Below are positions 7,668 through 60,258 of a stretch of DNA of 64,000 nucleotides, one piece after another. The notes under the pieces are model-generated. The model was not told where the DNA came from and made no database searches. It worked only from the letters and a program-made list of their open reading frames with translations. The number at the start of each line of letters is the position of its first letter. Positions within the stretch are counted from its first letter, which is position 1. A program made the translations under genes and the position numbers. This stretch comes from Andalucia godoyi And28 (Eukaryota > Protista > Jakobida): assembly GCA_009859145.1 (NCBI GenBank), contig VRVR01000057.1, positions 1 to 64,000 of the forward strand, in the 5' to 3' direction.

Positions 7668-7671
<4 letters not shown>

Positions 7672-7744
<73 letters not shown>
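7672..7744. repeat. Interrupted (CT)n microsatellite
   Basis: Directly visible. Confidence 0.95.
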
Positions 7745-7747
<3 letters not shown>

Positions 7748-12570: not shown

Positions 12571-14040
12571 TCACGTGGATCGAGCATTCCTGGCGTTCTC
12601 CAGAGAAATCAAGAATGCCTTCCACGCAGAAACCTCGCCAGCCGGACGAGAGCCACTAGCTCCTTGAGACTCGATGTAGCGCTGCAACTCCGGGTACAAT
12701 GCAGACAGCGGTGAGAAATTCTTTGACCATTCTCTGGAATCGGCTTCGTTCGAAGAGCAGACTCGGTAGCCCGCTTCCAGGAGCATTCCCACCATGGTCA
12801 GAACAATTTCCGGATACTGCGATCCATAATCCATGAATTCCGAGAAGGAGCGCGTGCGCTTCGACGACAAGAGCTTCATCAATTCGTTTGCGATCCCGGG
12901 AGTGAGCATGTTCATCTTCTCTCCAATAGCCCGCAAAAACACGGGGACACGGCCGTTGTCCGCAGTCTTCATGATTGGATGGGCATGTGGATCCTGTCTA
13001 TGTTCCAAGAGCGACGCTGCAATTTGCGGCGCATAGTAAAAGCAATGAACAAGAAGCGGCCGCAGAATGAACACATCGTCTGGACTGGCGGTGAGCACTC
13101 GGAGCAGACGTGCAAACAGGAAAACACCGCGACGAAGCGCTGAAAGCTCGGAAAGGATCGTCACGGACGACCCGAAAACAGAAACCACCTTTTCGAGCAT
13201 TGACCGGCGCTTCTGCAAAATGGACTCCACTTGGGAATGATTTGGCGGGAACCCCCGCCGCTGCAGCTCGATGAGCGCAGACTGCATGCCTTCGAGCGAC
13301 AAGACCAGCGAAAAGCAGTCTTCCAAAGCGGCCTGAACATGCAGCTTCGCTTTCGAAGACCCCTTGATTTCGGCAGACAGCAAAGAATGCGGTAAATCCA
13401 GAGACATGCGAGGCCGACGCAACGAGAATGGCGCAACCTTTCCAAGCTGCCGATCTGACGATTCGTCCTTGGACATTTCCGCTGGGCTCTTCGACGGCGT
13501 TGCAAACTCTGTCAAATTGGGAGGCAAGAAGCCAGCGCGGAAGGACGCAGGATCGCGACGGCTCGTGAATGCCAGATAATAGTAATCCTCGTTCCACGCA
13601 TCTTCAATTGAATACGACAGGACCAAACACTTGTTGACAAACTCCAGATCCGACTGCGTCATCATTCGCGGTCCTGATTCCGAGATGGGGTCTGCAGGAG
13701 GAAGAAACGCCACGACCTCCGACGCGTCGAACTGGTCGTCGATTTCTCCGTGCGCAGCCTTTGTTGCTTGCAGAATATCGTTCGCGAGATCGTCGAAGTC
13801 CTCTTCTTCGTCATCCATGCCAGCCGCTCCCATCGCCTGCTTGGCCGACGCCTGCAGGCTCACTGCCGAAGAAAATCCGAGCCCCAGCTGATCCAAGGAC
13901 ACCGCCTGTGTCGGCATCTGCCATTCTTCGCCCGCATCAAACGTCTCGTCGTTGAAGTCGTCCGCATCCTCATCGAGAACCCCGCCGATGTACTCGCCAC
14001 CAAGAAAGTCGTCGCTCGTCGGATCCAGATAATCGTCCAT
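12571..14040 (-). CDS. PAT1: mRNA decapping activator Pat1
   Basis: DDFNDETFD N-terminal motif, MMTQSD...EDAWNEDYYY, LGKV..SLRRPR..L, helical C-terminal domain. Confidence 0.88.
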   Translation of the reverse strand: MDDYLDPTSDDFLGGEYIGGVLDEDADDFNDETFDAGEEWQMPTQAVSLDQLGLGFSSAVSLQASAKQAMGAAGMDDEEEDFDDLANDILQATKAAHGEIDDQFDASEVVAFLPPADPISESGPRMMTQSDLEFVNKCLVLSYSIEDAWNEDYYYLAFTSRRDPASFRAGFLPPNLTEFATPSKSPAEMSKDESSDRQLGKVAPFSLRRPRMSLDLPHSLLSAEIKGSSKAKLHVQAALEDCFSLVLSLEGMQSALIELQRRGFPPNHSQVESILQKRRSMLEKVVSVFGSSVTILSELSALRRGVFLFARLLRVLTASPDDVFILRPLLVHCFYYAPQIAASLLEHRQDPHAHPIMKTADNGRVPVFLRAIGEKMNMLTPGIANELMKLLSSKRTRSFSEFMDYGSQYPEIVLTMVGMLLEAGYRVCSSNEADSREWSKNFSPLSALYPELQRYIESQGASGSRPAGEVSAWKAFLISLENARNARST

Positions 14041-23021: not shown

Positions 23022-23626
23022 TGAACAAAGGCACAATATGCACAAAAAGTCACAGAGCACAGATGCACAGATGCAGGGAGGAAGTGGACGTGGCAGTCTG
23101 CAGTCTCGTTTTCTTTCTTCTTCTTCTTCTTTTTTTTATATATCTTTTTCCTTTTTTTTTTTTCTTTTTTGTGCCCTCTCTTCTTTTCTTTGCAGCGTTG
23201 ACAAACGACAATCTGCACTTTCTCCTCTCAAAGCGTGTCCCTGTGAGCGCCAGAAAGATGCGTCATTGGGGAAGATATGGGCGGTCCTTTGGGAGTGGAG
23301 GGAAAAAAGGCGATCGATGACATTCAGCAGCATCGCGTGATGCCAGAGCGCTCTCTCTCTCTCTGTTTTTTTTTTTTGAACCGTGACTACAGTCGGCTCG
23401 GTCTGTATTATTTTTTATTTTTATTTTTGGCTGGAGGAGGGAACTCGAACTCTTTGGAAAAGGTCGAAGTGGACTGCTGGCTCGTGAACTCCTGGAAATC
23501 TCGCAGCGCTTTTGTGGAACTACGAGTTACAAAAAATATACCCCCGTACGAGTCCGAAATCAACATTTACCTGGTGCTGGAAGCGACTTCGCAAAAGGAC
23601 GAGGGGGGAAATAAGCATTACTGGAA

Positions 23627-41710: not shown

Positions 41711-41765
<55 letters not shown>
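41711..41765 (+). repeat. (GA)n microsatellite running directly into the ALDH ATG
   Basis: Directly visible; ATG at 41766. Confidence 0.95.
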
Positions 41766-41769
<4 letters not shown>

Positions 41770-43301
41770 GTGGAAAGATGGAAGGGGTTGTTCACTACGA
41801 CTTGTTTGTGTCAGGGGCCAAGGTGCGCGGCCAGGGTCCTGTGCTGCATGTGCAGAATCCCGGGACGCTGGAGCTTGCGTACACGTGCAGCACCGCGAGT
41901 AGTGCGGATGTGGAGGCTGCGTTTGCGAGTGCGTCTGCAGCGTATGTGTCTGGGGCATGGTCGAACTCGATGAGTGCTCGGGAGCGTGGACGGGTGCTGT
42001 TCCGGGCGTCAGAGCTGATCCGGGAGCAAGCGGACTTCCTGGCGATGTTGGACTGCGTGTCAACGGGGCGGCCGATTCGGGAGTTGCGGGCGCAGGCGGG
42101 GCGGATTGCAGAGTGGTTCGAGTACTTCGCGGGAGTTCTGCAGGCGCTCGAGGGACAGGTGACGCCGTTTGCGGGACAGTATCTGAACTATGTTCGGCGA
42201 GTGCCGCTAGGTGTTGTGGCGCACTTCACGGCGTTCAACCACCCGTTGCTGCTTGCAGCAAAGAAGCTGGCGCCGGCACTGGCGGCTGGAAATACAGTCG
42301 TGCTCAAGCCGTCGGAACTGGCCCCGGCCTCCACGTACGAGCTTGCGTATCTGCTGAAGAAGGCCGGGTTGCCAGACGGAGTGCTCAACATCGTGAACGG
42401 CGTCGGCGCGGAAACAGGTGCGGCAATGCTCAGGCTGCCGTTTGCAAAGTTTGACATTACGGGTGGCGATGCTGCGGGAAAGCTCGTTGCACAGGCCGCT
42501 GGGAAGTTCCTGGCGCACTGCACTTGCGAACTTGGAGGCTCGGCCCCGGTGCTGGTCTTTGCTGACGCAGACATCGATCAAGCGGTCAATGGCGTCTTGT
42601 TTGGGGCATTCATTGCGTCTGGACAGACGTGCATCGCTGCAAAACGCATCATGGTCGAGCGGTCCATCTACAATGTCTTTGTGCCGAAGCTGGTGGAGAG
42701 GGTCAAGGCAATCCAGCTCGGGGTTCCCACGGATGAGTCGACGCAGATGGGACCCGTTGTGTCTGCGCTGCAGCTTGCCAAGATCGAGTCGGCAGTAAAC
42801 GAGGCAGTAAACGACGGCGCGCAGATTCTGTGCGGTGGCAGGCAAGCCGCAAAAACAGATGCTCTCAAGGGCCACTACTACGAGCCTACCGTGCTTGGAA
42901 ACGTGCGAAAGGAGATGTTCTGCATGCGCGACGAGATCTTCGGTCCGGTCATCTGCGTACATCCCTTTGATTCCGAGCAAGAGGCTCTGGACCTTGCGAA
43001 CAACACACGGTATGGACTCGGTGCTGCCGTCTGGACACTCAACGTCAAGAAGGCGCATCGCGTAGCGCATCGCATCAAGGCTGGCATCGTCTGGATCAAC
43101 TCCCACCACAGAAACGACCCGTCCAGTCCATGGGGCGGTTTCGGAGACTCTGGAATGGGCCGCGAAAACGGCATGGAAGCTCTTCGCGAGTACACGCAGA
43201 CCCAGAGCATTGTTGTCGAGCTTTCCGATGCTCCATTCGACTGGTTCGCAGCCACGGCAACCAAAACGGCATCTGCACACGGCAGCATCCGCTACAACTA
43301 A
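41766..43301 (+). CDS. NAD(P)-dependent aldehyde dehydrogenase
   Basis: PLGVV..FTAFNHP, AAGNTVVLKPSE, catalytic ELGGSAP and GQTCIA, EIFGPV, YGLGAAVW, HHRNDPSSPWGG..SGMGRENG. Confidence 0.96.
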
Positions 43302-43444
43302 TGGATTGCATTATGGTACGTGTACATTTTTTTAATTATTATTCAATAATAATAATAACAAGAACAGCGGGATGGGGTATATGAAAATGAAGTGGGAAGA
43401 CGGATGGATGAACTTTGTAAACGTACATGCATTGTTTTTGGCTT

Positions 43445-44638
43445 TCATTCCTCGGAGAGAACAAGGACAGGCTTGATCGTCTTGCCGGAGAGGGAGTCCT
43501 GGACAGCTTGGTTGATATCACCGAGACCTCCCGTGTAGTACGTGATGATTTTCTCGAATGGGAATCGTCCTTGGGCATGGAGCTCGATGAGACGCGGCAG
43601 AAACACCTTTGAGATCGCATCGCCCTGAATGACGCCTCGGATGGTCCGACCAAGCAAGATTTTATCCATCGGCAGCTGGACCGTAGTCCCCGGTGCAGAG
43701 CCCCCGACAAGCGCACACACGCCCGTAGGTCTCAGGGCTTCGAACGCCGTGCGCAACACCTCGGCATTCCCCGTCGTATCGATCGCATACTCGATTCCCG
43801 CAACACCGCCTGCCGTCGTCGTCGCACCAGACGCGACGCACGCTGCAATCTCGGCGATGACCTGGTCTCGTGATTTGCCGCGCGAGTTGATGACGTGAGT
43901 GCAGCCAAGCTCAGAAGCGAGTGTGAGCCGCGAGTCGTGCAGATCCACCCCAATGATGGTCGTGCATCCCGCAACGACCGCTCCCATCACCGCCGCAAGG
44001 CCCACAGCACCCGTGCCAAACACCGCAATCGACGCCCCTGCCGCCGGCTTCAGCGCATTCAGCACCGCACCCATCCCCGTCTGAAGCCCACAGCCCAGCG
44101 GCGCAAGTCGCTTCAACGGAATCCGAAACCGTTGCAAGTACTCCTTGTTCAGCTTGACGCAGTTCGCCGCGTACACGATCGTCCGAGTCGCGTGCGACGA
44201 CTGCCCGAAAAAGTGCGAGCCAATGCAAGTCCCAGCCCCAGCCCCAGCCCCCGCCTCGCTGGACTGCTCCGACCATGCCTTTTCCACCGTTGCGAAATTT
44301 GCGCGGTGGGCAGTGCAGTATGACGGTTTTCCTGCCAAGCAGTTCACACATGCCCCGCAACTGCCGTACGAAACCATCACCCAGTCCCCTACTTCGAAAC
44401 TACAGCCGCTGTCAGGCCCGCCCACCACCTCGACTACTCCGCATCCTTCGTGGCCCAGCACGCACGGGAAGGGGGTAGGGATGTGCCCATCGCGCACTGC
44501 AACGTCTGTGTGGCACACCCCGGATGCAACAACGCGGATCAAAAGCTCGTTCGCGCGCGGAACCCTCGAAAACGTCAGCTCCGTAAGCCGAAATGGACTG
44601 CCCACAGAATCCACTACTGCCGCTTGAACCGCTGACAT
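43445..44638 (-). CDS. Zn-dependent aryl/benzyl-alcohol dehydrogenase (MDR, XylB/AreB-like)
   Basis: GVCHTD, LGHEG, structural Zn site CGACVNC..GKPSYC, HFFGQSSHAT, PLGCGLQTGMGAV, FGTGAVG, IQGDA, GRFPFEK. Confidence 0.94.
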   Translation of the reverse strand: MSAVQAAVVDSVGSPFRLTELTFSRVPRANELLIRVVASGVCHTDVAVRDGHIPTPFPCVLGHEGCGVVEVVGGPDSGCSFEVGDWVMVSYGSCGACVNCLAGKPSYCTAHRANFATVEKAWSEQSSEAGAGAGAGTCIGSHFFGQSSHATRTIVYAANCVKLNKEYLQRFRIPLKRLAPLGCGLQTGMGAVLNALKPAAGASIAVFGTGAVGLAAVMGAVVAGCTTIIGVDLHDSRLTLASELGCTHVINSRGKSRDQVIAEIAACVASGATTTAGGVAGIEYAIDTTGNAEVLRTAFEALRPTGVCALVGGSAPGTTVQLPMDKILLGRTIRGVIQGDAISKVFLPRLIELHAQGRFPFEKIITYYTGGLGDINQAVQDSLSGKTIKPVLVLSEE

Positions 44639-45014
44639 TTCCGTACTGGATCTCTTTTCTTTTTTCTAGGCGGGGGGTAAAAAACAAGACAAAAAAAACA
44701 ATTAAATTTAATATATATATATGTAACTAATATTTTCCAATCCGAACGCAGCCAGATTCATTGAGAAAAGACATTGGTGCGAGCCAACGGGAAGGGGGTT
44801 TCAGTGGCCTGCGGGGACATTCCCCACTGCAGAAAAGACAAAGCATCAGGTGATGCAACAGTGGGGCTGATGCAAAAAAAACAAGAACTACGACGGACGG
44901 AAATTCGTCGGTTTTTGCGGATTAAAAAAAAGAAGAGCGGTCTGAGAGTGTGGAATAGATCTGGAAGCTTATTCTGTGCACAAAAAAAAAGGCGCTGAGG
45001 AAAAGAAAAGAAAC

Positions 45015-45607
45015 ATGAGAATGATGAGCGAGAGAAGGGGTAGAGGAGAGTCGCTGCAGCTGGTTGTGATTGTGGTGATGGCGCTGGCGCTGGCTGCGGC
45101 TGGACTGCTGGTGGTTCCGAGTGCAAGAGCCGAAGTGCACTTTGACGCGACGTGTGTGCAGGTCAATGAGACGCTGAATGCAACGAAGATGGCGGAGCTG
45201 TACCGGCCAAATGCAATCTTGCTTGCGACAGTCTCGAATGCACCCCGGACACTCAAGCGCTCATCGAGGACTACTTCACCATGTTTCTCAAGAAGGAGCC
45301 GTACGGAATGGTGAACACGCAGTACTTTTATCCGGGCTGCAACACATCCATTGACCTTGGCGTGTACATTTTTGGGCTCATAGATACGACGGCAAGTGCC
45401 ACGACGTCGTTGCGAGGTACACCTATGTCTACACATACGCGGACGGCATGTGGAAAAATCATGCGCCACCACTCGTCGGCAATGCCTGAGATCGAAGCCG
45501 CGCCTACCAGCGCCGACCCCCCTCGTTTCCCGTTCCCCTGCAGTCGCGCACGTGCTCCTCCCATTTCCATCCTCTCCGGCCTCCTTCTCTTGCGAGTGAG
45601 TGAGTGA
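45015..45607 (+). pseudogene. Frameshifted COG4875/CaMKII-AD (iota-carbonic anhydrase-like) secreted protein
   Basis: Signal peptide; LYRPNAILLATVSNAPRT | TQALIEDYFTMFLKKEPYG..GCNTSIDLGVYIF | DVVARYTYVY..DGMWK | IMRHHSSAMPE. Needs frameshifts near 45250, 45383 and 45456. Confidence 0.8.
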
Positions 45608-45758
45608 GCGAGACGAGACGAGAGGCCGATATGATTGCTCGGTTGCTTGTTTTTACTTGTTAAAAAACATGGGGAATTTTTGGTAATACAATACGATGAT
45701 GAACCAAAAGCATAGGTTGGAAAGCCCACATTCTTTTTTATCCTACCTTTTTTTATTC

Positions 45759-46973
45759 TTAGACAATGTTGATTCCAAGGATCTTCTTGGCGTTTCGGTT
45801 GCGGATTGCGCACTGAATGTCGTCGCTCTCGACGGAGTCCATGGCGCGGTAGTTTCGATCGACCGAGTCCCATCGTGGACAAGCACCTTGCTGGTCATGG
45901 CCGCTGTCGACTTGACGGAAGAACGGATGGTCGGTTCCAAACATGATTCGATCGTGAGCGGCAAACTCGATGGCGGTTCGGAGAGCGGCGGGGTGGTATG
46001 CAATGGCGTCGTAGAAGAGGTTTTCGCGGAGATACGCGGAAGGGTCTGTCTTTTTCAGGCGGTTGGGCCCGTGTGCAAGATGAAAGTCGTGGGCGACGCA
46101 CGAGTCGAGACGACCGGCAAGGTACGGCAGACATCCACCGGCATGGGCTGCGAGGATGCGGAGATTCGGGAAGCGATCGTAGACGCCGGAAAGGACGATC
46201 TTGGCGACGGCCGCCGTTGTTTCGAATGGAAATCCGAGGGCGAGGAGCAGCGCATGGCCGTACTGGGTGCCGAGCTGCTCCGGCGCCCCAAGACCGTAGT
46301 GCGGATGGAGAAACAGCATCAAGCCCGTGTCCTCGGCTGCCTTGTACAGCTCGTCCCGCGCCGGGTCGTCCACATTCGTCGAACCGATGATCACGCCCTT
46401 CAGATTCGGGCAGTGTGCGGCAATGCGGTGCAGCTCGGCGGCGGCGTGTGTCGCGTGGTCCGGCAGTCCAAGAGGAAGCATGCCAAATCCCGAAAACCGC
46501 GTCGGGTGCTCCGCGCACATCGCTTGTAAATCATCGTTCAGCACGCGACAAAAGTCGACAGCACTGCACGCCTGCTGCGAAACCCCGTCGTGCAGCCATC
46601 CCCCTGTCGTCAGCGTTGATCCCGGCTCGACATTTGTCGACAGGAAGTCCAACCATGGATTTGCAGTCGACAGCACCGAGTGGGCAATGTGGTGCGTGTC
46701 CATAAACGAGAGCTTGTACGACGGGTCCCAGAACTCGGGACCCACGGGTCGCCCGCTTCCTGTCGTCGCACCCGCCTCTTCATGCGGCAAAATCAGCAGC
46801 CGCTCCACCGCATCTCCACTGGCACTATTCGCACGAAATAGACGCGGCACGCTCGCCCGGCTTCGCAGAAGCGACACATATCGCGGAAGATACACGTGCG
46901 AATGGACATCCACACTCCAGCTCGAGTACCCATCCGTTGACTCGCTCTGTACACGCTCCGACAACTTTGCCAT
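45759..46973 (-). CDS. Amidohydrolase-2 decarboxylase, uracil-5-carboxylate (isoorotate) decarboxylase-like
   Basis: VDVHSH, GRPVGPEFWD, STANPWLDF, LFLHPHYGL, LALGFPFETT, AHAGG.LPYLAGR, MFGTDHPFF; same motif set as fungal IDCase. Confidence 0.85.
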   Translation of the reverse strand: MAKLSERVQSESTDGYSSWSVDVHSHVYLPRYVSLLRSRASVPRLFRANSASGDAVERLLILPHEEAGATTGSGRPVGPEFWDPSYKLSFMDTHHIAHSVLSTANPWLDFLSTNVEPGSTLTTGGWLHDGVSQQACSAVDFCRVLNDDLQAMCAEHPTRFSGFGMLPLGLPDHATHAAAELHRIAAHCPNLKGVIIGSTNVDDPARDELYKAAEDTGLMLFLHPHYGLGAPEQLGTQYGHALLLALGFPFETTAAVAKIVLSGVYDRFPNLRILAAHAGGCLPYLAGRLDSCVAHDFHLAHGPNRLKKTDPSAYLRENLFYDAIAYHPAALRTAIEFAAHDRIMFGTDHPFFRQVDSGHDQQGACPRWDSVDRNYRAMDSVESDDIQCAIRNRNAKKILGINIV

Positions 46974-47312
46974 CTTCTTCTCTTTTCTTCTTTTCTCCTC
47001 TGTTTTTTTTTTCTTTTTACTTGAATATATATATATATATATATACAGTTTTTCATTGCATGAAGCTGATGTCTTCCGTCTTCTTTTGCGGTCGGTCCGA
47101 ACTGACCGCAATTGCATGCTTGTGATTGCACGATACGCCTCGGGGGAAAACGGTTCTTTCGGGCATTAAAATTGGGGAAATTGTCCGCCTGTGCATTTTC
47201 CTTTGCTCGATTTGCTGTTGCGTTTCTTATTATGTATTTGTTGCTTTAGATTTTTTCAATTTTTTGGTGGTGTGCTGAGTGTATCTTTTATATTTATTGC
47301 GTAGCGTTGAGA

Positions 47313-49376
47313 ATGGGAAAAGCAAAGGAGAAGGGAACGGCGGCGAAAGCAGTGGGAGGAAGGAAAGGACGAGGAGGAGGAGGAGGAGGAGAAGGAGGAG
47401 GAGGACTGCGACTGTCGACGCAGCTTGAGAAGAGCACTAGGAACTCGAATGGCAAATGGATGTGTCCTGGGTTGCTTGTTCCGCTGACGGAGCATTGGCG
47501 GTCGGCACCCATCTACCATCTTCGCCCGTCTGAGCTGCTGCATATTCTGACCCACTACCCCGTCCAAGGCCCGTGCATCCTCGCATCCGACCCTGCGTAC
47601 CTTGCGTTTCTGCGGGACCAGTTCCAGTCATCTGCATCGCCGACATCGACGACATCAACGTCGACATCGACGGCAGAGGTCGCAGATCTACACACGTTTC
47701 TCGCATACTCGCTGCCGCACCCGTCCCTCGCGCCACTTCACCCGCTTTTGGACCCCGCCAAAATTGATTCCGCCAAAATACTCGCTCCGTCTGTCTTTTT
47801 CCATCTCTGGAAGCACTCATTTTCATCCCCGTCGTCATTGTCATCGTCGTCGTCGTTGCGGAGCGCACCTGCACGATTTCCCCATGTTGCCGCCTTTTTC
47901 TGTTCTGCACAATTCCTTTCATCCTACCCAAGCAACGACCGTAGGGACGCTGCGCATGATGATCACCAAGAAGATGGGGAACGGGATGAGGACGAGGACG
48001 AGGACGAGGAGATGCGGACGAGGAGGATGGAGCGGGACCGGGAAGAGCAGGCGGTGGCGGGGATGCTGGGCGAGGCACATGTGCTGTATTCGTGGGCGGG
48101 AGATCGTCGGACATATCGAGCGTTTTGGGACATGTTGACGCGACGAATGTCGTGCGAGGAGCACCCTTCCTGTTTCGGGAAATCCGCGATTGCCCGCAGC
48201 GCCATTGCCCACGATCCCGAGCTCGTGCGCGAGTGGGCACGGACGCTGGGCACCCAGCGGCGCATCGCTCGCATCCGAGACCTCTTGGCTGACGTCGTTC
48301 CGCTTCACTTCTGGTCGGCGGACGTCGATTCCAGTCCGGGCAACGAGGACAGCGCGGGACACGGCGCGAGTGATGAACGAGAGCAGCAAAGACAGCACCA
48401 AAGGGAGAGTGTTCAGGAGCGGAGGGATGAGGAATGGGACTACGTGCACATTGACCGAAACGTGGGAAGCGGGGCAAGTGGACTGCTACCCCACCACAAA
48501 AGCACAAAGAGGAGTGGCGGCGGATCTGATGGTGGAGCTTCCTGCTCGTGTGTAATGCTGCGTAATGCTCCGTCGTCTGTGACGGTCGTCAACTGCCTCG
48601 CTTGTGAGAACCGTGCCTTGATGCTCGAGTGTGATGTGCATTCTCATGGGTATGGTGGGTGGTGTGGGAATCAGAGGCTGCGGCGTGGCGAGTATGCCCG
48701 GATGGAGCTGTTTCGAACGGAGGACGGACGAGGGGTTGGGGTTCGGGCTGCGGGGTGCGTGCAGACTGGGCAGCTTGTGGTGGAGTACTGCGGCGTCGTG
48801 AGGACGCGGAGTGCGTATGAGCGAGATCTGGGTCGGTACCGAAAGATGGGGAAGCTGCAGTACGCGATGGATCTGGACGCCACGCACGTAATCGATGCAA
48901 CCGAAAAGGGCAATTGGGGCCGATTTCTGAACCATTCGTGCGCTCCGAACTGCAAGACGCAAATCTGGACTGTCGATGGCCAGCCGCGCGTCGGCATCTA
49001 CGCGATCCGCGATATTCCAACAGGAGAGGAGCTCACATATGACTATCGCTTCGAATGGTTCTCAAAGGACGGCGTCGAATCGTGCAGATGCGGAGCCCCG
49101 AATTGCCGAGGCATCATTGGAACCATCCGAAACCACGCAGCCTCTGGCGTATCACTCGCCTCTCCGTCTCTGGCGGAAACATCGAAAAATGCGTCTCAGT
49201 CGAAGAACAAGAACAAGAACAAGAACAAGAACAAGGTCAAGGACAGGGACATGGACAAGGACAAGGACAAGAAGGGCGCAGCGGGAGCGCAGATCAAGGT
49301 CGATGCTTTTTTCAGAGCCGCAAGAAAATCACCATCATCGTCATCCACGACCATCAACCGCACAAAGTCTGCGTGA
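47313..49376 (+). CDS. AWS-SET-postSET histone lysine methyltransferase (SETD2/ASH1/NSD-like)
   Basis: C..R...EC...CGNQR, GRGVGV, VVEYCG, IDATEKGNWGRFLNHSCAPNC, GEELTYDYRF, CRCGAPNCRG. Confidence 0.9.
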   Translation: MGKAKEKGTAAKAVGGRKGRGGGGGGEGGGGLRLSTQLEKSTRNSNGKWMCPGLLVPLTEHWRSAPIYHLRPSELLHILTHYPVQGPCILASDPAYLAFLRDQFQSSASPTSTTSTSTSTAEVADLHTFLAYSLPHPSLAPLHPLLDPAKIDSAKILAPSVFFHLWKHSFSSPSSLSSSSSLRSAPARFPHVAAFFCSAQFLSSYPSNDRRDAAHDDHQEDGERDEDEDEDEEMRTRRMERDREEQAVAGMLGEAHVLYSWAGDRRTYRAFWDMLTRRMSCEEHPSCFGKSAIARSAIAHDPELVREWARTLGTQRRIARIRDLLADVVPLHFWSADVDSSPGNEDSAGHGASDEREQQRQHQRESVQERRDEEWDYVHIDRNVGSGASGLLPHHKSTKRSGGGSDGGASCSCVMLRNAPSSVTVVNCLACENRALMLECDVHSHGYGGWCGNQRLRRGEYARMELFRTEDGRGVGVRAAGCVQTGQLVVEYCGVVRTRSAYERDLGRYRKMGKLQYAMDLDATHVIDATEKGNWGRFLNHSCAPNCKTQIWTVDGQPRVGIYAIRDIPTGEELTYDYRFEWFSKDGVESCRCGAPNCRGIIGTIRNHAASGVSLASPSLAETSKNASQSKNKNKNKNKNKVKDRDMDKDKDKKGAAGAQIKVDAFFRAARKSPSSSSTTINRTKSA

Positions 49377-50687: not shown

Positions 50688-50760
50688 TGTTCCCGCCCGG
50701 ACTCGAACCGAGGACCTTCTCCGTGTCAAGGAGACGAAATACCAACTATTCTACGGGAAC
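50688..50760 (-). tRNA. trnV-GAC: tRNA-Val (anticodon GAC)
   Basis: GTTCCCG/CGGGAAC acceptor stem + A73; D loop AGTTGGTA; anticodon stem TCTCC/GGAGA with loop TT-GAC-AC; T arm CTCGG-TTCGAGT-CCGGG; T7 Pol III terminator about 16 nt downstream. Confidence 0.95.
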
Positions 50761-50968: not shown

Positions 50969-53326
50969 CTAAATTCCTAGGCCGCCCTGCGCAAAGATCG
51001 GGTGGGCTCGATCCTCGAGAAGCTGCTGTGCAGTCCATCCATCTCCGATTACACGCAGCACCATGCGGGAGGCATCAATAACACACCTTCCGCAGTTGCA
51101 GTGAAATCCCCACGATCGACTCAGACGGATCTGCCGATCTGCAAAGTAAGGACCATTCCTCAAATCACCTCTGGCTTTGATATTCAGGTAATTCAGGGTC
51201 AACTCTTCTCCTGCCTTCAGGGCGGTCCTTGCGCAAATCATTTCCCGTTTTCGTGAGTCCAAACAGGATGTCTTGTATACTGTTGGCACGCAGGAGTGAT
51301 TAATGCTGCTGATGACATTGGAAACCCGCACCGAACAGCCATCCGCGAAAGCGTTCAAGCGCACGGCTGCCCGAAGAAACGTCAAGCTGAATATCACTTC
51401 ATCGCTCCTGTCTCTCGGATCCGAGGGGAAATCATTCCCTGCAGCCAAACATCGTACGGCCTCACGAGTGTGGCGACAAATGAACATCTTCCTTCGTAGC
51501 ACGTGCAGCGTTTCGTCAATCCCTGTTGGCAGAACTGTAATGTTTTCTTTGATTCGGTCAAAAAACTGCTTGCATGCGTCTCCCATGACGATCTCAACGA
51601 TGCCCTTCTGAGATGCGCGTGATGAACCATCTGAAATCAATGACATCACAAGCGGAGAAAGTTTTGCTGCAAGGTTCTCCAGGTCTGCAGAAGCACAACA
51701 ACCTGTCTGGGTGTCTTGTGAAAGCAGGTCTCGGAGTTGCCCTAGTGTATCTGTCTTACTCTTCGATTCTCCAACAGAGACTGCTGCACACCTTGCGAGG
51801 AGGTTACGCACTGCCATAGACACAACCTCCTGTGCCCAGGTGTGCATTTGCTTCGCAGCTGCAAACCGCTTAACATTCCCAACGTTGCATAGCCCGTTAA
51901 TGTACGTTCCCACACTCTGCGTCATCGCAACTGCATCGCCGTTGCTTGTCTCTGGAATTGCAAATTCCACGATATCGTTGTCGGAAAGCAAAATCTCGCC
52001 TTCTGAAATGGTTGATGTGGCCACTAGAGCTCGCCCTTTTCCTGGCATGAATTTTGCTTCGAACAGTTGCGAAACAGGAGTCATGGTCGAGTGTTCGTAA
52101 TTAGCAAGCAACGCACGCTGTTTATCGGACAGCGTTTTGGATGTTTTAGCGAGGTCCACCTCCAGCATCTCTTTCCAGTTCCACAATGTGTGCAGCAATT
52201 GAATGGGGTCTGCGGTCTCGGACTCGCTGGAACAAAGAGCTTTCCAAGCGGAATTCAGGTTTGATCGAAAGGGATACTGCAGAGCCAAGTCTTCCAGAGA
52301 AATCCCGCGAAGTACCCCTTCCAGGTACTCGCCTGCAGACAGGATTCGCCTGTTGTTTGCCACTTTCAAGATATCCACGGCAGCAGCGACTCTTCCCACA
52401 CCATCCAGCGCCACGATGAGCCGCCGAACCGTCTTTGAAGCGAGTCTGCATACAGTGGCGTTTTGAGTTTCCGTTTTTTCGGCTACACGACGCACCGTAT
52501 CGAGAGCATTCTGGCAGTCCTCCAGAGCACTGTGATAGCAAGCCATGTTAATGTGAGCTTGAGCACGATTGGAGTACACTGCTACCAGATTCTGAAGATC
52601 GCAGTCCGCCTGCAAGGTCCTGTTCTCCTCCAGCTTTCGAATGCATCGCGTGTACAACATGATCGCAGTGAAGTTGTCCTTTCTTTCAAAGACGGCGTTG
52701 GCCTCTGCCTTCAGAACCGCAACAGTGTCTTCTGCACAGCCGCGAGTGTTGAGATGGGTACCGTCGTGCCAGGGTTTCTGCAGCAGTGGCTTGATCCGTT
52801 CATCAAATGCATACGGCAGCTCGAGATCTTGTCGTGCTTCCATTATTATGATGGGAATCTGGCTTTCAAACAAGCGTACTTGCGGTTCTCGGATGATCAT
52901 TGCGGTGCGGATGTCTCTGTTTGTGATTGCGTCCAGCACAACCTGTGCATCGTCTGTTGCATGATAGAATGCAATTGCGGGAATGAGCAAGAATGCTGCA
53001 TTTCCATGCTCGTCTTCCACTGGAATTAAGGCAAATGAAGGACATCGTATTGCGAACAAATCGAGTCTCCGCACAACCACATAGCATCCTTTTGTGGAGT
53101 TGGAACTGGATCTGCAGACTGTCAGCGGGCTACTCTGGAGCGCGGGCTGCTGGGTTGCAGGGTCAAAACTGTTCTCAAAATGCGCAAGTGGCAAACAGCA
53201 ACCACTCGTGACGTGTTGGCGTGGTGCCAGCAGGGCATCCAGGCGGTAGTCTGGATGTGCACCCATCTTTTTGATGAATGTTTCCAGCAACAACGACACA
53301 ACTAATAACTCTTTCTTCGAAAACAT
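50969..53326 (-). CDS. TPR + SET (SMYD-like) protein
   Basis: TPR (LKAEANAVF...VYSNRAQAHINM..ALEDC), PGKGRALVAT...GEILL, SINHSCVP, GEELTLNYL, WGFHCNCGRC. Confidence 0.85.
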   Translation of the reverse strand: MFSKKELLVVSLLLETFIKKMGAHPDYRLDALLAPRQHVTSGCCLPLAHFENSFDPATQQPALQSSPLTVCRSSSNSTKGCYVVVRRLDLFAIRCPSFALIPVEDEHGNAAFLLIPAIAFYHATDDAQVVLDAITNRDIRTAMIIREPQVRLFESQIPIIIMEARQDLELPYAFDERIKPLLQKPWHDGTHLNTRGCAEDTVAVLKAEANAVFERKDNFTAIMLYTRCIRKLEENRTLQADCDLQNLVAVYSNRAQAHINMACYHSALEDCQNALDTVRRVAEKTETQNATVCRLASKTVRRLIVALDGVGRVAAAVDILKVANNRRILSAGEYLEGVLRGISLEDLALQYPFRSNLNSAWKALCSSESETADPIQLLHTLWNWKEMLEVDLAKTSKTLSDKQRALLANYEHSTMTPVSQLFEAKFMPGKGRALVATSTISEGEILLSDNDIVEFAIPETSNGDAVAMTQSVGTYINGLCNVGNVKRFAAAKQMHTWAQEVVSMAVRNLLARCAAVSVGESKSKTDTLGQLRDLLSQDTQTGCCASADLENLAAKLSPLVMSLISDGSSRASQKGIVEIVMGDACKQFFDRIKENITVLPTGIDETLHVLRRKMFICRHTREAVRCLAAGNDFPSDPRDRSDEVIFSLTFLRAAVRLNAFADGCSVRVSNVISSINHSCVPTVYKTSCLDSRKREMICARTALKAGEELTLNYLNIKARGDLRNGPYFADRQIRLSRSWGFHCNCGRCVIDASRMVLRVIGDGWTAQQLLEDRAHPIFAQGGLGI

Positions 53327-57873: not shown

Positions 57874-60258
57874 CTACACTGCGCTGCCCTGATCTTTTTC
57901 TCGAGTAAAGAGCTTGGAGGAAGACTGTCGAAGAGGTGGTGGCGGCAGGATGTCATCGTCAGGGAAGCGGGGTGCAACGATGCGAGTGACCATTCGACCC
58001 TTTCCTTTCACTTGCACTTCGGCAGGAGGCAGCCACCGGTAGTGATCTCGGTCGTTCCTGATGTCTGCCGGCAAGCACTGATACAGGTCTTCGGTTATCT
58101 GCAAGCATCCTGGCTTTCCATGGGATTCCATTCTTGACGCCGAGTTCACAGTGTCGCCCCAGATGTCCCAAACCTTCTTTGACGTTCCCAGCACACCAGC
58201 AACGACAGGGCCGATAGCCGCACCCGCACGAATCCGCAGTCGGACTCCAGGAGGCAGCCAAGCCGGAGGGCAGAACGTTGCCCAGTCATGAAGCATTGTC
58301 AGAATCTCCATGGTCGCAAGAAACACCGCCTCAGCTTGCTCCTCCGGCGGCTTTAGCTCCGGTACTCCGGACACGGCAAAGTACGCATCTCCAATGGTCT
58401 TGATCTTTTCGACCCCATACTTTGCCGCAATTCGATCGAACGTGGAAACAAGCCCATTCAGCAAACTCACCAACACACGAGGCTCCAAAATAGCGGACAT
58501 CTCGGTGAACTGGACAATGTCCGTGAACAGGACGGTCGCATGTCTGTACTCGTCTGCAATAAAGGCCTCTCCTCTCATCATGCGCTTCGCAATGGGCAGG
58601 GGGATGACATTGGCAAGCAGCATGTCTTGCTTGCGAGACATGACAAGAACGCGGCGCATCTGATTAAACGAGACACTCAGCATGCCAACCTCATCCTGGG
58701 TTCTGAAACGTCGGCAGCACTTCTTGTTGGAAGAACCGATCGCAATCGGCTTTTCAAGATCCTCGCCAGATCGAATTCGCAAAACATCTTCATTCAGTTG
58801 TTTGATAGGCCGAACGACAAGAAAATCGATTCCAAAAAAGGCCAAAAAGGAAATTACCAAAATGGACCCACCTATCGACGCTGAGAGAATGATGAGTGTC
58901 TGCACTCCAATATCATACGACGATCGTTCGTTGTCAATCGCAAACACAATCTTACTGGTTCCGTCAAACGTGGATACCTCCGTGGTCGTAAGAACACGAG
59001 CAGAACTAGCAGAGACGTCCTGTTGGGAGGTCGAGTGGCATTGTCGAACATTTCCCGGAACCGACGCACCATCAATATGGACGATCGAATACACGTCTGG
59101 AAACACATGATTCCAGAGCTTTTTTCCTGCAATAGGCTGAACGACAGAAGCTGGATCTAATGACGATGCAGCGCTTCGGAGCCAGCTCGGAGCATCTGAC
59201 GCCGGAATGGTTGGGTACAGACTCACGCATCGAGTCATCAACGTCGCAAACTGCTTCAGATTGGACGGCAATATGCGCGAGGCATACACGAGAAGCCCTG
59301 CAGGAGGCCCTGATCCGTCTGTTTTGAGCATCACGGTGGCCATTACAAACCAGATCGAGTCGGAACTGACAAAGAATCCACCAGTGGCAGTCTGTGTCTC
59401 ATTGGACTGCTGGAGCATGAGCTGCACTGTCGATGTGGGCAGAATCGAGGGCGTCATCGCACTTTGGGTGGTCCGCGCAATGTCCAGTCCGGAAGAGCCA
59501 TACATGACATAATCGAGTCCGTACGATGCTGTGAAATCAATGCCGCCATTCAGCATAAAACTCAAGCCGTACGTACCCGAAAAGAAGCTGCTGGCAGCGG
59601 CCGGATCCGACGGCCAGTCATTCAGGATCGCATTGTACGGATCGTCCCATACCGAATTTGTGAGTAAACCCTGGTACAATGAAAAGTAGTTGGTGGAGAG
59701 GATGTCTGCCATTCTCTGTGAATCCAGCTTGGAGTCGGACTTCTCCACGCTGATGAACGCCGGAAGTGTCACAAAGTACATTACGCATAGCACCAGCGTC
59801 AGCAGGACTCCGCATGCAAACAACAAGAAGATCAGCGACTTCAGACGCAACGTCCATCGGAACCGACACTTTAAGAATTTCATGCATTTTGAGTCTTGCT
59901 TCGCAGTACTGTCGTCCGAGTACGAGTCCGTTACCACAGAACCTGCTCCTGCGGACCGCGGACTGAACCCTCCTTCAGAATTCGAGATGCTCGCAGTCGA
60001 AAGATGCGCACTCTTTGTGGACCCCGGTGTGTTCGCGGAGTACTTCGAGTACGGTGACGTCGGAAGGAGATCGGCAGTCGAATTGCGAGAATTTGGAGAT
60101 GTAGAGCCTCTATGGCTCAATGCTGCATCTGGAGAGAGAAACTGATCTGCGGGTATGGGAATTGGGAGGGGAACATCGGGACTCTGATGATCCTGCGCAT
60201 ATGCCGAGGAAGGATGGGTGGTATCCCCTGCGGTCCCCGACGAGTCGGACACGGACAT
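57874..60258 (-). CDS. Receptor-type class III adenylate cyclase: TM-CHASE4-TM-HAMP-cyclase
   Basis: TM1, CHASE4-like NSVWDDPY, TM2, HAMP (VVRPIKQL..DEVGMLSVSFNQM), VLFTDIVQFT, KIKTIGDAY (ATP-specifying K), WDIWGDTVNSASRMES. Confidence 0.9.
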   Translation of the reverse strand: MSVSDSSGTAGDTTHPSSAYAQDHQSPDVPLPIPIPADQFLSPDAALSHRGSTSPNSRNSTADLLPTSPYSKYSANTPGSTKSAHLSTASISNSEGGFSPRSAGAGSVVTDSYSDDSTAKQDSKCMKFLKCRFRWTLRLKSLIFLLFACGVLLTLVLCVMYFVTLPAFISVEKSDSKLDSQRMADILSTNYFSLYQGLLTNSVWDDPYNAILNDWPSDPAAASSFFSGTYGLSFMLNGGIDFTASYGLDYVMYGSSGLDIARTTQSAMTPSILPTSTVQLMLQQSNETQTATGGFFVSSDSIWFVMATVMLKTDGSGPPAGLLVYASRILPSNLKQFATLMTRCVSLYPTIPASDAPSWLRSAASSLDPASVVQPIAGKKLWNHVFPDVYSIVHIDGASVPGNVRQCHSTSQQDVSASSARVLTTTEVSTFDGTSKIVFAIDNERSSYDIGVQTLIILSASIGGSILVISFLAFFGIDFLVVRPIKQLNEDVLRIRSGEDLEKPIAIGSSNKKCCRRFRTQDEVGMLSVSFNQMRRVLVMSRKQDMLLANVIPLPIAKRMMRGEAFIADEYRHATVLFTDIVQFTEMSAILEPRVLVSLLNGLVSTFDRIAAKYGVEKIKTIGDAYFAVSGVPELKPPEEQAEAVFLATMEILTMLHDWATFCPPAWLPPGVRLRIRAGAAIGPVVAGVLGTSKKVWDIWGDTVNSASRMESHGKPGCLQITEDLYQCLPADIRNDRDHYRWLPPAEVQVKGKGRMVTRIVAPRFPDDDILPPPPLRQSSSKLFTREKDQGSAV

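What the first reader, a model, noticed from the sequence alone, without database searches (positions are those of the whole stretch)
41766..46973. ALDH + aryl-ADH + isoorotate-decarboxylase-like cluster: candidate dehydrogenase route 5-hydroxymethyluracil -> 5-formylU -> 5-carboxyU -> uracil
Seen: within 5.2 kb lie an ALDH, an aryl-alcohol-type MDR dehydrogenase and an amidohydrolase with IDCase-type motifs, separated only by one pseudogene. Established: fungal thymidine salvage uses thymine-7-hydroxylase (2OG/Fe) for the CH3 -> CH2OH -> CHO -> COOH oxidations, then IDCase. No T7H-like gene is adjacent here. Inference: an aryl-ADH plus an ALDH is the chemistry that takes a heteroaromatic CH2OH to COOH, so the trio could salvage 5hmU (from oxidised DNA or 5hmU-rich phage/prey DNA) without a dioxygenase. 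The alternative is catabolism of an aromatic alcohol/acid.
Basis: partly seen in the sequence, partly recalled or inferred. Interest (0 to 1): 0.75.

Follow-up and report, generated by a model that had tools for sequence, protein, structure and literature searches.

The report
Aldehyde dehydrogenase paired with isoorotate decarboxylase
In a compact protist genome, the enzyme that finishes turning thymine into uracil sits beside an aldehyde dehydrogenase that is also its neighbour in three unrelated genomes, so that dehydrogenase (and less surely the alcohol dehydrogenase between them) is probably an undescribed extra step of this salvage pathway.

Summary
Window 41766-46973 holds an intact ALDH, an intact aryl-alcohol-type zinc ADH, a frameshifted CaMKII_AD/SnoaL-like pseudogene and a genuine isoorotate decarboxylase (IDCase). 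All 11 published IDCase metal, carboxylate and uracil-binding residues are conserved. No T7H-like gene lies anywhere in the 64 kb window.

- **ALDH-IDCase link: real.** The same ALDH clade lies directly upstream of IDCase, on the same strand, in three other contigs: the nearest relative (L006), a fungal contig where it sits between a true T7H and IDCase (L005), and an AT-rich marine contig (L043).
- **Bacterial parallel.** In bacteria this ALDH clade has a COG2159 (Amidohydro_2) decarboxylase within 2.5 kb in 47 of 80 loci, usually abutting it.
- **Most likely role.** The ALDH is most likely a 5-formyluracil dehydrogenase that feeds IDCase.
- **ADH link: weak.** Its ortholog in the relative lies on another contig, two genes from a T7H-like oxygenase.
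- **"Without a dioxygenase": not supported.** T7H is adjacent in L005, and the rest of this genome could not be searched.

I rate this a new variant of the known thymine salvage pathway. No enzyme activity was tested.

The parts
41766..43301 (+). ALDH, 511 aa, of the clade with HH[RK]xDPxSPWGG and a C-terminal DW[FY]...RY[SGN] tail. Proposed 5-formyluracil dehydrogenase.
   Evidence: PF00171 E=6e-154. It falls below every NCBIfam equivalog cut-off; the best is BADH at 473 bits against 668.6. Best solved relative is 4go4, 4e-113. N158, K181, E255 and C289 are invariant in the clade alignment A2. Members of the same clade abut IDCase in L005, L043 and L006. The clade has an Amidohydro_2 gene within 2.5 kb in 47 of 80 bacterial loci.
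43445..44638 (-). Aryl-alcohol-type MDR zinc alcohol dehydrogenase, 397 aa, convergent with the ALDH (144 bp between the stop codons). Possible 5-hydroxymethyluracil dehydrogenase; weakly supported.
   Evidence: ADH_N plus ADH_zinc_N. Solved relatives 5tnx 2e-89 and 1f8f benzyl alcohol dehydrogenase 5e-84. Homologues are mostly bacterial aryl-alcohol dehydrogenases at 45-52% identity; the one ortholog, P0122, is 56% identical. Zinc ligands C42/H63/E64/C183, structural C94/C97/C100/C108, GxGxxG at 208-213 and D232 are all invariant.
45015..45607 (+). Pseudogene of a secreted CaMKII_AD/SnoaL-like protein with three frameshifts. It lies between the ADH and IDCase and is not part of the proposed pathway.
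   Evidence: Sequence and ORFs. The joined frames match PF08332 at E=4e-8, 33.8 bits, above the 22.1 cut-off. Other long ORFs in the window are intact, for example 1569 aa at 18351-23060, so this is not assembly noise.
45759..46973 (-). Isoorotate (uracil-5-carboxylate) decarboxylase, 404 aa, with a lineage-specific insert of about 21 aa after the NPWLDF motif.
   Evidence: PF04909. Solved IDCases score 2e-65 against 5e-25 for ACMSD and LigW. In the 404-aa numbering, H24, H26, R75, N105, H223, F248, H277, R288, D348, F351 and F352 correspond to Cordyceps militaris H12, H14, R68, N98, H195, F222, H251, R262, D323, F326 and F327, and all are invariant in alignment A1. The residue roles come from PMC6305744.
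41711..41765 (.). (GA)27 tract running up to the ALDH start codon.
   Evidence: (D1).
44711..44722 (.). (TA)6 tract 73 nt upstream of the ADH start codon, followed by a purine-rich leader.
   Evidence: there are only three (TA)>=5 tracts in the 64 kb, and two of them sit upstream of the ADH and IDCase; repeats D2 and D5 occur in the same order and spacing before both genes.
47025..47044 (.). (TA)10 tract 52 nt upstream of the IDCase start codon, followed by a purine-rich leader.

Best explanation
The locus is a rearranged copy of a conserved eukaryotic two-gene unit, ALDH followed by IDCase. That unit belongs to the thymine-to-uracil salvage pathway: thymine > 5hmU > 5fU > 5caU > uracil.

- IDCase (shown by sequence): a true metal-dependent uracil-5-carboxylate decarboxylase.
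- ALDH (inferred from conserved neighbourhood): oxidises 5-formyluracil to 5-carboxyuracil with NAD(P)+. It would hand IDCase its substrate and relieve or replace the third, slowest T7H oxidation.
- ADH (weak inference): a bacterial-type aryl-alcohol dehydrogenase that now lies between the two genes. It may oxidise 5-hydroxymethyluracil to 5-formyluracil.
- First step (inferred): the C-H hydroxylation of thymine cannot be done by a dehydrogenase. It must come from a T7H encoded elsewhere, or be bypassed if 5hmU is taken up ready-made.
For: 1. IDCase identity. Solved IDCases are the best match by 40 orders of magnitude. All 11 catalytic and specificity residues are invariant. Orthologues in 15 of 24 assessable low-GC contigs sit head-to-head with a true T7H.

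2. ALDH-IDCase tandems with the same ALDH clade.
- L005, a fungal contig: T7H(-) 7346-8320, ALDH(+) 8385-9881, IDCase(+) 10001-11023. The T7H matches thymine dioxygenase 5c3p at 2.5e-93. Only 65 bp separate T7H from the ALDH.
- L043, 25.6% GC, marine: the ALDH C-terminus (HHKNDPCSPWGG...VRYS*) ends 129 nt before IDCase.
- L006, nearest relative (ALDH 58% identical): an IDCase N-terminus (...WSIDVHSHVYLPSYLDLLRQRKAVPR) starts about 190 bp after the ALDH stop codon.

3. In 80 bacterial loci of this ALDH clade, an Amidohydro_2 (COG2159) decarboxylase lies within 2.5 kb in 47, mostly abutting and on the same strand. An MDR ADH lies within 2.5 kb in 13. The clade is therefore a habitual partner of this decarboxylase family.

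4. 5fU is the only aldehyde in the T7H/IDCase pathway (PMC4787775).

5. ADH. It is intact and NAD-type. Its ortholog in the relative lies two genes from a T7H-like 2OG oxygenase that keeps R190, Y217, F292 and N294. The ADH and IDCase share an unusual (TA)n plus purine-leader upstream layout.
Against: - No activity was measured.
- In the window the three genes share no bidirectional promoter, and no specific upstream word of 7 or more bases.
- ALDH and IDCase are not adjacent in Phytophthora, Gorgonomyces or Dinochytrium. Most fungal T7H-IDCase pairs lack this ALDH, so it is dispensable at best.
- The ALDH's bacterial partners are ACMSD-like, not IDCase. In the known ACMSD/AMSDH pair the ALDH acts after the decarboxylase.
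- The ALDH's closest solved relatives are muconic-semialdehyde and betaine-aldehyde dehydrogenases.
- The ADH is not syntenic in the relative. The gene context of its nearest bacterial homologue is uninformative.
- T7H alone performs all three oxidations in vitro (PMC4787775).
Confidence: 0.45

Rival explanations
1. Chance neighbours. IDCase serves thymine salvage on its own, with a T7H elsewhere. The ALDH and ADH are general alcohol/aldehyde detoxification or aromatic-alcohol catabolic enzymes that merely lie nearby in a gene-dense genome.
For: Gene density is about one per 2.5 kb. The genes share no promoters or specific motifs. The ADH family is the ordinary XylB/benzyl-alcohol type. The ADH is not syntenic in the relative. 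ALDH and IDCase are unlinked in three named genomes.
Against: The ALDH-IDCase tandem is seen in three further, very different contigs, one of which also carries T7H. The ALDH clade is a systematic partner of the same decarboxylase superfamily in bacteria. For the ADH alone, this rival remains the more likely reading.
Confidence: 0.2
2. The ALDH works after or beside the decarboxylase, as AMSDH does after ACMSD. The ALDH/COG2159 pair would be an inherited module for an unidentified (hetero)aromatic carboxylate, and the ALDH substrate would be a ring-opened or side-chain semialdehyde, not 5fU.
For: The bacterial partners are ACMSD-like: 4ign at 1.7e-51 against IDCase at 8e-32. They often come with a PuuE-like ring amidohydrolase, an ABC transporter and a GntR regulator. 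The ALDH's best solved relative is a hydroxymuconic semialdehyde dehydrogenase, and NCBIfam gives HpaE-type hits.
Against: The eukaryotic partner is an IDCase with every uracil-recognition residue intact. IDCase is reported to reject non-natural substrates (PMC6305744). Its product, uracil, carries no aldehyde. In L005 the pair is flanked by a true T7H.
Confidence: 0.15
3. One reading: a dioxygenase-independent, NAD(P)-linked route (ADH, then ALDH, then IDCase) that salvages ready-made 5hmU from damaged, phage or prey DNA in an organism lacking T7H.
For: All three enzymes are intact and lie within 5.2 kb. There is no T7H in the 64 kb. The ALDH-IDCase link is real. The ADH and IDCase share a (TA)n upstream layout.
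Against: T7H sits with the ALDH-IDCase pair in L005. A T7H-like gene lies near the ADH ortholog in the relative. The ADH link is not replicated elsewhere. T7H absence from the whole genome is untested.
Confidence: 0.15

Closest known systems
Fungal thymidine/thymine salvage pathway: thymine-7-hydroxylase (T7H, a 2OG/Fe dioxygenase) plus isoorotate decarboxylase (IDCase)
   Same: The window's Amidohydro_2 gene is an IDCase by sequence and by all active-site residues. Its orthologues are typically head-to-head with T7H. The end product, uracil, and the 5caU decarboxylation step are the same.
   Different: No T7H lies in the window. An ALDH and an ADH accompany IDCase; neither has been described for this pathway in the literature searched. 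In the described pathway T7H alone performs all three oxidations (PMC4787775).
ACMSD plus 2-aminomuconate-semialdehyde dehydrogenase (kynurenine and 2-nitrobenzoate pathways; from my own knowledge)
   Same: It pairs a COG2159 Amidohydro_2 decarboxylase with an ALDH. The bacterial partners of this ALDH clade are ACMSD-like.
   Different: There the ALDH oxidises the semialdehyde product of the decarboxylase. IDCase yields uracil, which has no aldehyde, so here the ALDH must act before the decarboxylase or be unrelated. The window's ALDH does not reach the hydroxymuconic-semialdehyde dehydrogenase model cut-off: 378 bits against 693.
TOL upper-pathway XylB/XylC (benzyl alcohol dehydrogenase plus benzaldehyde dehydrogenase; from my own knowledge) and the solved Acinetobacter benzyl alcohol dehydrogenase 1f8f
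   Same: The ADH belongs to this MDR subfamily (5e-84 to 1f8f). The chemical logic ArCH2OH > ArCHO > ArCOOH is the same.
   Different: The partner ALDH belongs to a different clade. The next enzyme is a uracil-specific decarboxylase rather than a ring dioxygenase. The host is a eukaryote.
5-Hydroxymethylfurfural pathway (oxidation to furan-2,5-dicarboxylate, then decarboxylation; from my own knowledge)
   Same: The overall logic is the same: a hydroxymethyl or formyl group on a heteroaromatic ring is oxidised to a carboxylate, then removed as CO2.
   Different: The enzyme families are entirely different (GMC oxidase and UbiD/UbiX decarboxylase). It is an analogy only.

Membership tests
Isoorotate decarboxylase (uracil-5-carboxylate decarboxylase, COG2159/Amidohydro_2) | Amidohydro_2 domain, with solved IDCases as the closest relatives by a clear margin | tested here: met
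   PF04909 E=7e-21. 4hk5/4lak/4hjw score 2e-65 against ACMSD and LigW at 5e-25.
Isoorotate decarboxylase (uracil-5-carboxylate decarboxylase, COG2159/Amidohydro_2) | Metal ligands His12, His14, His195 and Asp323 (C. militaris numbering) | tested here: met
   H24, H26, H223 and D348 of the 404-aa protein are invariant in A1. Their equivalence to the C. militaris residues was read from the alignment. The residue list comes from PMC6305744.
Isoorotate decarboxylase (uracil-5-carboxylate decarboxylase, COG2159/Amidohydro_2) | Uracil-specific hydrogen-bond residues Arg68 and Asn98 | tested here: met
   R75 (in GRP) and N105 (in ANPWLDF) are invariant in A1. Both are absent from the ACMSD-like bacterial partner L087_AH2.
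Isoorotate decarboxylase (uracil-5-carboxylate decarboxylase, COG2159/Amidohydro_2) | Carboxylate binders His251 and Arg262; ring-stacking Phe222, Phe326 and Phe327 | tested here: met
   H277, R288, F248, F351 and F352 are invariant.
Isoorotate decarboxylase (uracil-5-carboxylate decarboxylase, COG2159/Amidohydro_2) | Decarboxylation of 5-carboxyuracil to uracil | not testable with these tools
   Needs an enzyme assay.
Canonical thymine salvage locus (T7H head-to-head with IDCase) | A T7H ortholog adjacent to IDCase | tested here: not met
   No T7H-like sequence lies in the 64 kb. The feature is met in 15 of 24 assessable low-GC orthologous loci and in L005.
Aryl-alcohol (benzyl alcohol) dehydrogenase subfamily of zinc MDR ADHs | ADH_N plus ADH_zinc_N domains, catalytic and structural zinc ligands, and a GxGxxG/Asp NAD+ site | tested here: met
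   C42, H63, E64, C183; C94, C97, C100, C108; G208, G210, G213; D232.
Aryl-alcohol (benzyl alcohol) dehydrogenase subfamily of zinc MDR ADHs | Closest relatives are characterised or annotated aryl-alcohol dehydrogenases | tested here: met
   1f8f at 5e-84 and 5tnx at 2e-89, with the next class at 4e-48. Homologues are named aryl-alcohol dehydrogenase by their sources. No NCBIfam equivalog cut-off is reached.
Aryl-alcohol (benzyl alcohol) dehydrogenase subfamily of zinc MDR ADHs | Substrate: benzyl-type alcohol versus 5-hydroxymethyluracil | not testable with these tools
   Needs an enzyme assay.
ALDH clade 'HH[RK]xDPxSPWGG ... DW[FY]..RY[SGN]', partner of COG2159 decarboxylases (defined here) | ALDH fold with catalytic Cys, general-base Glu and oxyanion Asn | tested here: met
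   PF00171. C289, E255, N158 and K181 are invariant.
ALDH clade 'HH[RK]xDPxSPWGG ... DW[FY]..RY[SGN]', partner of COG2159 decarboxylases (defined here) | The clade motif and C-terminal tail | tested here: met
   H448, D451, P452, P455, W456, G457, G458, D492, W493 and R509 are invariant in A2. The C-termini are listed.
ALDH clade 'HH[RK]xDPxSPWGG ... DW[FY]..RY[SGN]', partner of COG2159 decarboxylases (defined here) | A COG2159 Amidohydro_2 gene next door | tested here: met
   In the window IDCase lies 2.4 kb away, two genes on. It abuts the ALDH in L005, L043 and L006. In bacteria it lies within 2.5 kb in 47 of 80 loci.
Named ALDH equivalogs (betaine-aldehyde, HpaE, hydroxymuconic-semialdehyde, phenylacetaldehyde dehydrogenases) | Score at or above the curated NCBIfam cut-off | tested here: not met
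   Best scores are BADH 473 against 668.6, HpaE 434 against 638 and OH_muco_semi_DH 378 against 693.
Co-regulated eukaryotic metabolic gene cluster | Shared or bidirectional promoters, or a shared specific cis-motif | tested here: inconclusive
   The gene order is ALDH>, <ADH, pseudogene>, <IDCase, and no two of the three are divergent. No shared k-mer of 7 or more bases was found. The ADH and IDCase share a low-complexity (TA)n plus purine-leader layout.
Co-regulated eukaryotic metabolic gene cluster | Synteny conserved in relatives | tested here: inconclusive
   ALDH-IDCase is conserved in L006. The ADH is not: it lies on L001, whose neighbours are AAT and DAGK.

The most novel reading that the evidence does not exclude
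The ALDH clade may be the general 'carboxylate-making' partner of COG2159 decarboxylases in bacteria and eukaryotes. Together with the ADH it would then give this protist a complete NAD(P)-linked route from 5-hydroxymethyluracil to uracil (ADH > ALDH > IDCase) that needs neither O2 nor 2-oxoglutarate. Such a route could run without T7H on 5hmU released from damaged or ingested DNA.
Probability: 0.15. Interest if true: 0.75.

Novelty: new variant of a known kind. Interest (0 to 1): 0.6.

Why it matters
The thymine-to-uracil pathway is the textbook chemical model for TET-type oxidation and for the long-sought direct decarboxylation of 5-carboxy-pyrimidines. It has been described as needing only two enzymes, T7H and IDCase.

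A dedicated NAD(P)-dependent 5-formyluracil dehydrogenase, and possibly a 5hmU dehydrogenase, would add new enzymes to that pathway. It would show how cells dispose of the reactive, mutagenic base 5fU. It would also give enzymologists new catalysts for formyl- and hydroxymethyl-pyrimidines.

Separately, the tight pairing of one ALDH clade with COG2159 decarboxylases across many bacterial phyla marks an uncharacterised catabolic module. That module can now be tested directly.

Tried and rejected
- **T7H in the window.** tblastn with two queries found nothing.
- **Exact-match look-up of the source genome.** It is not on record. The window's proteins are singleton clusters listed under EukProt only, so the organism stays unidentified. 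A paper search for accession prefixes found nothing.
- **Bacterial IDCase orthologues** (46-47% identity, R68/N98 conserved). No ALDH, ADH or close T7H lies in their flanks. Only a 34%-identical T7H-like gene lies about 6 kb away in L035 and L037.
- **Neighbour clustering around 83 IDCase loci.** The only recurrent recognisable eukaryotic neighbour is T7H.
- **Named eukaryotic genomes.** Phytophthora and Gorgonomyces IDCase, and Dinochytrium ALDH, have no partner adjacent.
- **Context of the nearest bacterial ADH homologue.** It sits next to an SDR and toxin-antitoxin genes, which is uninformative.
- **Recent horizontal transfer by composition.** GC3 of the three genes is 0.68-0.69, within the range of their neighbours. 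I rejected this as evidence.
- **Shared promoter motif.** None of 7 or more bases. The (TA)n/purine similarity is low-complexity, so I kept it only as a note.
- **Inverted repeats that might mark the inversion of IDCase.** Only short, low-complexity matches.
- **Literature search for a known 5fU or 5hmU dehydrogenase, or for an ALDH in the pathway.** Nothing found.
- **Is the L001 oxygenase a true T7H?** Unresolved. It is 35% identical; R190, Y194, H214, D216, Y217, H271, R286, S288, F292, N294 and E122 are kept, but N87 is lost.

Full report
**1. Observation**

The window is a gene-dense eukaryotic sequence with genes on both strands and no introns evident in the long ORFs. GC is about 52%. 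Neighbouring genes include Vps39, ThrRS, PTPLA, BORCS8 and SET-domain genes. The source is given only as EukProt.

- An ALDH at 41766-43301(+), PF00171 E=6e-154.
- An MDR zinc ADH at 43445-44638(-).
- A broken gene on the + strand at about 45015-45607.
- An Amidohydro_2 gene at 45759-46973(-).

The broken gene reads as a secreted CaMKII_AD/SnoaL-like protein once three frameshifts are bridged: PF08332, 33.8 bits against a cut-off of 22.1. Other long ORFs in the window are intact, so it is a real pseudogene. tblastn of a true T7H and of a T7H-like protein finds nothing anywhere in the 64 kb.

**2. What the three enzymes are**

*Amidohydrolase.* It is an isoorotate decarboxylase. The solved fungal uracil-5-carboxylate decarboxylases are its best matches at 2e-65, against 5e-25 for ACMSD and LigW. 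A structural and computational study lists the IDCase residues as follows (PMC6305744):
- metal ligands H12, H14, H195 and D323;
- carboxylate binders H251 and R262;
- stacking residues F222, F326 and F327;
- the uracil-specific residues R68 and N98.

All eleven are invariant in a 20-sequence alignment that includes the window protein, where they are H24, H26, H223, D348, H277, R288, F248, F351, F352, R75 and N105. The window protein has a private insert of about 21 residues after the NPWLDF motif.

*ADH.* It belongs to the aryl-alcohol (benzyl alcohol) subfamily: 5tnx at 2e-89 and 1f8f at 5e-84, with the next class at 4e-48. Its zinc and NAD+ sites are intact. Apart from one ortholog (P0122, 56% identity) and two protist transcripts, its homologues are bacterial aryl-alcohol dehydrogenases at 45-52% identity.

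*ALDH.* Its catalytic residues are intact. It reaches no curated NCBIfam equivalog cut-off. It belongs to a distinct clade marked by HH[RK]xDPxSPWGG and a C-terminal DW[FY]...RY[SGN] tail. The clade occurs in oomycetes, chytrids, assorted protists and many bacteria.

**3. Is the neighbourhood meaningful? IDCase side**

A pattern scan of metagenome contigs with the IDCase alignment returned 80 loci. I searched these, plus four loci fetched by exact look-up, with tblastn.
- Of the 42 lower-GC (mostly eukaryotic) loci, 24 have at least 1 kb upstream. In 15 of those a T7H ortholog is transcribed divergently 0.45-1.1 kb away.
- This fits these proteins being the IDCase of the thymine salvage pathway.
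- It also shows that T7H-IDCase is the usual fungal arrangement.
- The 42 high-GC (mostly bacterial) loci carry no T7H of 40% identity or more, and no clade ALDH or ADH.

**4. The ALDH-IDCase pair recurs**

Three other contigs carry an ALDH of the window's clade directly upstream of IDCase on the same strand.

| Locus | Origin | Arrangement |
|---|---|---|
| L005 | 46.8 kb fungal contig (Velvet genes; its ALDH groups with chytrid ALDHs) | T7H(-) 7346-8320; ALDH(+) 8385-9881 (48% identical to the window's); IDCase(+) 10001-11023; aldo-keto reductase(+) 11627-12628 |
| L043 | 1.5 kb marine contig, 25.6% GC | ALDH C-terminus (HHKNDPCSPWGG...VRYS*), then 129 nt, then IDCase |
| L006 | Contig from run SRR15116022 carrying the closest known ALDH (58% identity) | About 190 bp after the ALDH stop codon an ORF starts MEAALPLSQRVLSADSNMAEWSIDVHSHVYLPSYLDLLRQRKAVPR...; it is 56% identical to the window IDCase N-terminus (tblastn 3e-10) before the contig ends |

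The L005 oxygenase is a true T7H: it matches thymine dioxygenase 5c3p at 2.5e-93, with the next hit at 4e-45.

A clade-specific ALDH is at most one or two genes in a genome of thousands. I therefore expect 0.02 or fewer such immediate neighbours by chance among the 42 loci (my inference). The pairing is real.

The window looks like a rearranged copy of this tandem. IDCase is inverted, and the ADH plus the pseudogene now lie between the two genes.

**5. The ALDH clade in bacteria**

The closest bacterial ALDH (P0247, 53% identity) lies in an operon reading ADH, Amidohydro_2, ALDH, ADH, followed by an ABC transporter.

A scan of one genome per bacterial and archaeal species with the ALDH alignment gave 80 loci from Chloroflexota, Actinomycetota, Alpha- and Betaproteobacteria, Bacillota and others.
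- In 47 of them an Amidohydro_2 gene lies within 2.5 kb, usually 20-60 bp away on the same strand.
- An MDR ADH lies within 2.5 kb in 13.
- The partner is ACMSD-like (4ign at 1.7e-51 against IDCase at 8e-32) and lacks the IDCase R68/N98 motifs.
- Other recurrent neighbours are a Polysacc_deac_1/PuuE-like gene, a Peripla_BP_6 binding protein, an SDR, a GntR regulator, a TPP enzyme and an FAA hydrolase.

This ALDH clade is thus a habitual partner of COG2159 decarboxylases across domains. In an NJ tree the eukaryotic ALDHs group together, apart from the bacterial ones except for one SAR324 sequence.

**6. The ADH**

Evidence for the ADH being part of the pathway is thin.
- Its ortholog in the relative lies on another contig (L001), flanked by AAT-like and DAG-kinase genes.
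- Two genes from that ortholog is a 2OG oxygenase whose best solved match is T7H, but only at 2.4e-35 against 5e-30 for the next hit.
- That oxygenase keeps T7H's R190, Y194, H214, D216, Y217, H271, R286, S288, F292, N294 and E122, but not N87.
- Among the IDCase loci only L060 has an MDR ADH nearby, and it is just 30% identical.
- L005 has an aldo-keto reductase after IDCase instead.
- The nearest bacterial ADH homologue has an uninformative gene context.

**7. Regulation and composition**

The three genes are arranged ALDH>, <ADH, (pseudogene>), <IDCase. None shares a bidirectional promoter with another, and no specific upstream word of 7 or more bases is common to all three.

One oddity stands out. 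Only three (TA)>=5 tracts occur in the 64 kb. Two of them lie 73 and 52 nt upstream of the ADH and IDCase start codons, each followed by a purine-rich leader. The ALDH start abuts a (GA)27 tract. These are low-complexity sequences, so I treat them as a hint only.

GC3 of the three genes (0.68-0.69) falls within the range of their neighbours, so nothing points to recent transfer.

**8. Most likely mechanism**

- Shown by sequence: IDCase decarboxylates 5-carboxyuracil.
- Inferred from neighbourhood: the ALDH makes that 5-carboxyuracil from 5-formyluracil using NAD(P)+. 5fU is the only aldehyde in the pathway. It is also the substrate T7H binds most weakly, with about 3-fold lower affinity (PMC4787775).
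- Weakly inferred: the ADH oxidises 5hmU to 5fU.
- Inferred: the initial hydroxylation of thymine still needs a T7H.

The comparative data place T7H with, not instead of, the dehydrogenase (L005, and perhaps L001).

My confidence in the ALDH-centred explanation is 0.45. The rivals are:
- chance neighbours, 0.2 (for the ADH alone this is the more likely reading);
- an ALDH acting after the decarboxylase on a semialdehyde, as with ACMSD/AMSDH, 0.15;

**9. Comparison with what is known, and novelty**

The closest known system is the fungal T7H/IDCase thymine salvage pathway. The IDCase is a member of that family by every testable feature. The locus fails the 'T7H adjacent' feature.

Searches of the paper library found no 5fU or 5hmU dehydrogenase, and no ALDH linked to this pathway. 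I therefore rate the finding a new variant of a known kind.

**10. Limits**

- No biochemistry was done.
- The organism is unidentified.
- The rest of its genome could not be searched for T7H.
- L043 and L006 are short contigs.
- The bacterial module's substrate, and the order in which its ALDH and decarboxylase act, are unknown.

Noticed in passing
L094-L173 (bacterial loci); L087-L090: A conserved and apparently uncharacterised bacterial module. The ALDH of this clade abuts an ACMSD-like Amidohydro_2 gene. It usually comes with a Polysacc_deac_1/PuuE-like gene, a Peripla_BP_6 ABC transporter and a GntR regulator, and sometimes with MDR ADHs, an SDR, a TPP enzyme or an FAA hydrolase. It occurs across Chloroflexota, Actinomycetota, Proteobacteria and Bacillota. 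The substrate is unknown; it may be an N-heterocycle.
   Followed up: partly
window 45015-45607 (+): Pseudogene of a signal-peptide-bearing CaMKII_AD/SnoaL-like protein with three frameshifts (frames 0>2>1>2, near 45255, 45390 and 45457). It is wedged between the ADH and IDCase.
   Followed up: yes
window 44711-44722 and 47025-47044; 41711-41765: Two of the only three (TA)>=5 tracts in the 64 kb lie 73 and 52 nt upstream of the ADH and IDCase start codons, each followed by a purine-rich leader. A (GA)27 tract runs into the ALDH start codon. This may reflect a shared core-promoter layout, but the sequences are low-complexity.
   Followed up: partly
L022, L023, L040, L047, L050, L053-L055, L058, L060, L073, L074, L076, L077, L080, L084, L085: T7H and IDCase form a divergently transcribed pair 0.45-1.1 kb apart in most assessable fungal-type contigs. 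This two-gene cluster was not mentioned in the papers I read.
   Followed up: partly
L005:11627-12628 and L005:17203-17604: In the fungal T7H-ALDH-IDCase contig, an aldo-keto reductase follows IDCase directly. A nucleoside-phosphorylase (PNP_UDP_1) fragment lies about 6 kb downstream. Both could be further pathway genes.
   Followed up: no
L001:1993-3024: A T7H-like 2OG/Fe oxygenase lies two genes from the ADH ortholog in the nearest relative. It keeps most T7H substrate and cosubstrate residues but lacks N87. Its orthology to T7H is unresolved.
   Followed up: partly
L035 and L037, about 5.9 kb downstream of IDCase: High-GC (bacterial-type) IDCase loci carry a T7H-like oxygenase (34% identity) about 6 kb away. 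This hints that some bacteria may have the whole thymine-to-uracil route.
   Followed up: no
window 45759-46973 (protein residues about 113-137); window 43445-44638: The window IDCase has a private insert of about 21 residues after the NPWLDF motif. The ADH shares two insertions with its ortholog P0122 that all bacterial homologues lack.
   Followed up: no
window 50688-50760 (-): A tRNA-Val(GAC) gene, the only Rfam or ARAGORN hit in the window.
   Followed up: yes
window 57874-60258 (-); 8111-9568 (+); 47307-49376 (+) and 50969-53326 (-): Three other features of the window. There is a CHASE4-HAMP adenylate/guanylate cyclase, a bacterial-style sensor architecture in a eukaryotic gene. There is a fused dTDP-sugar epimerase/reductase (RmlC-RmlD-like). 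Two SET-domain genes lie just beyond the cluster.
   Followed up: no
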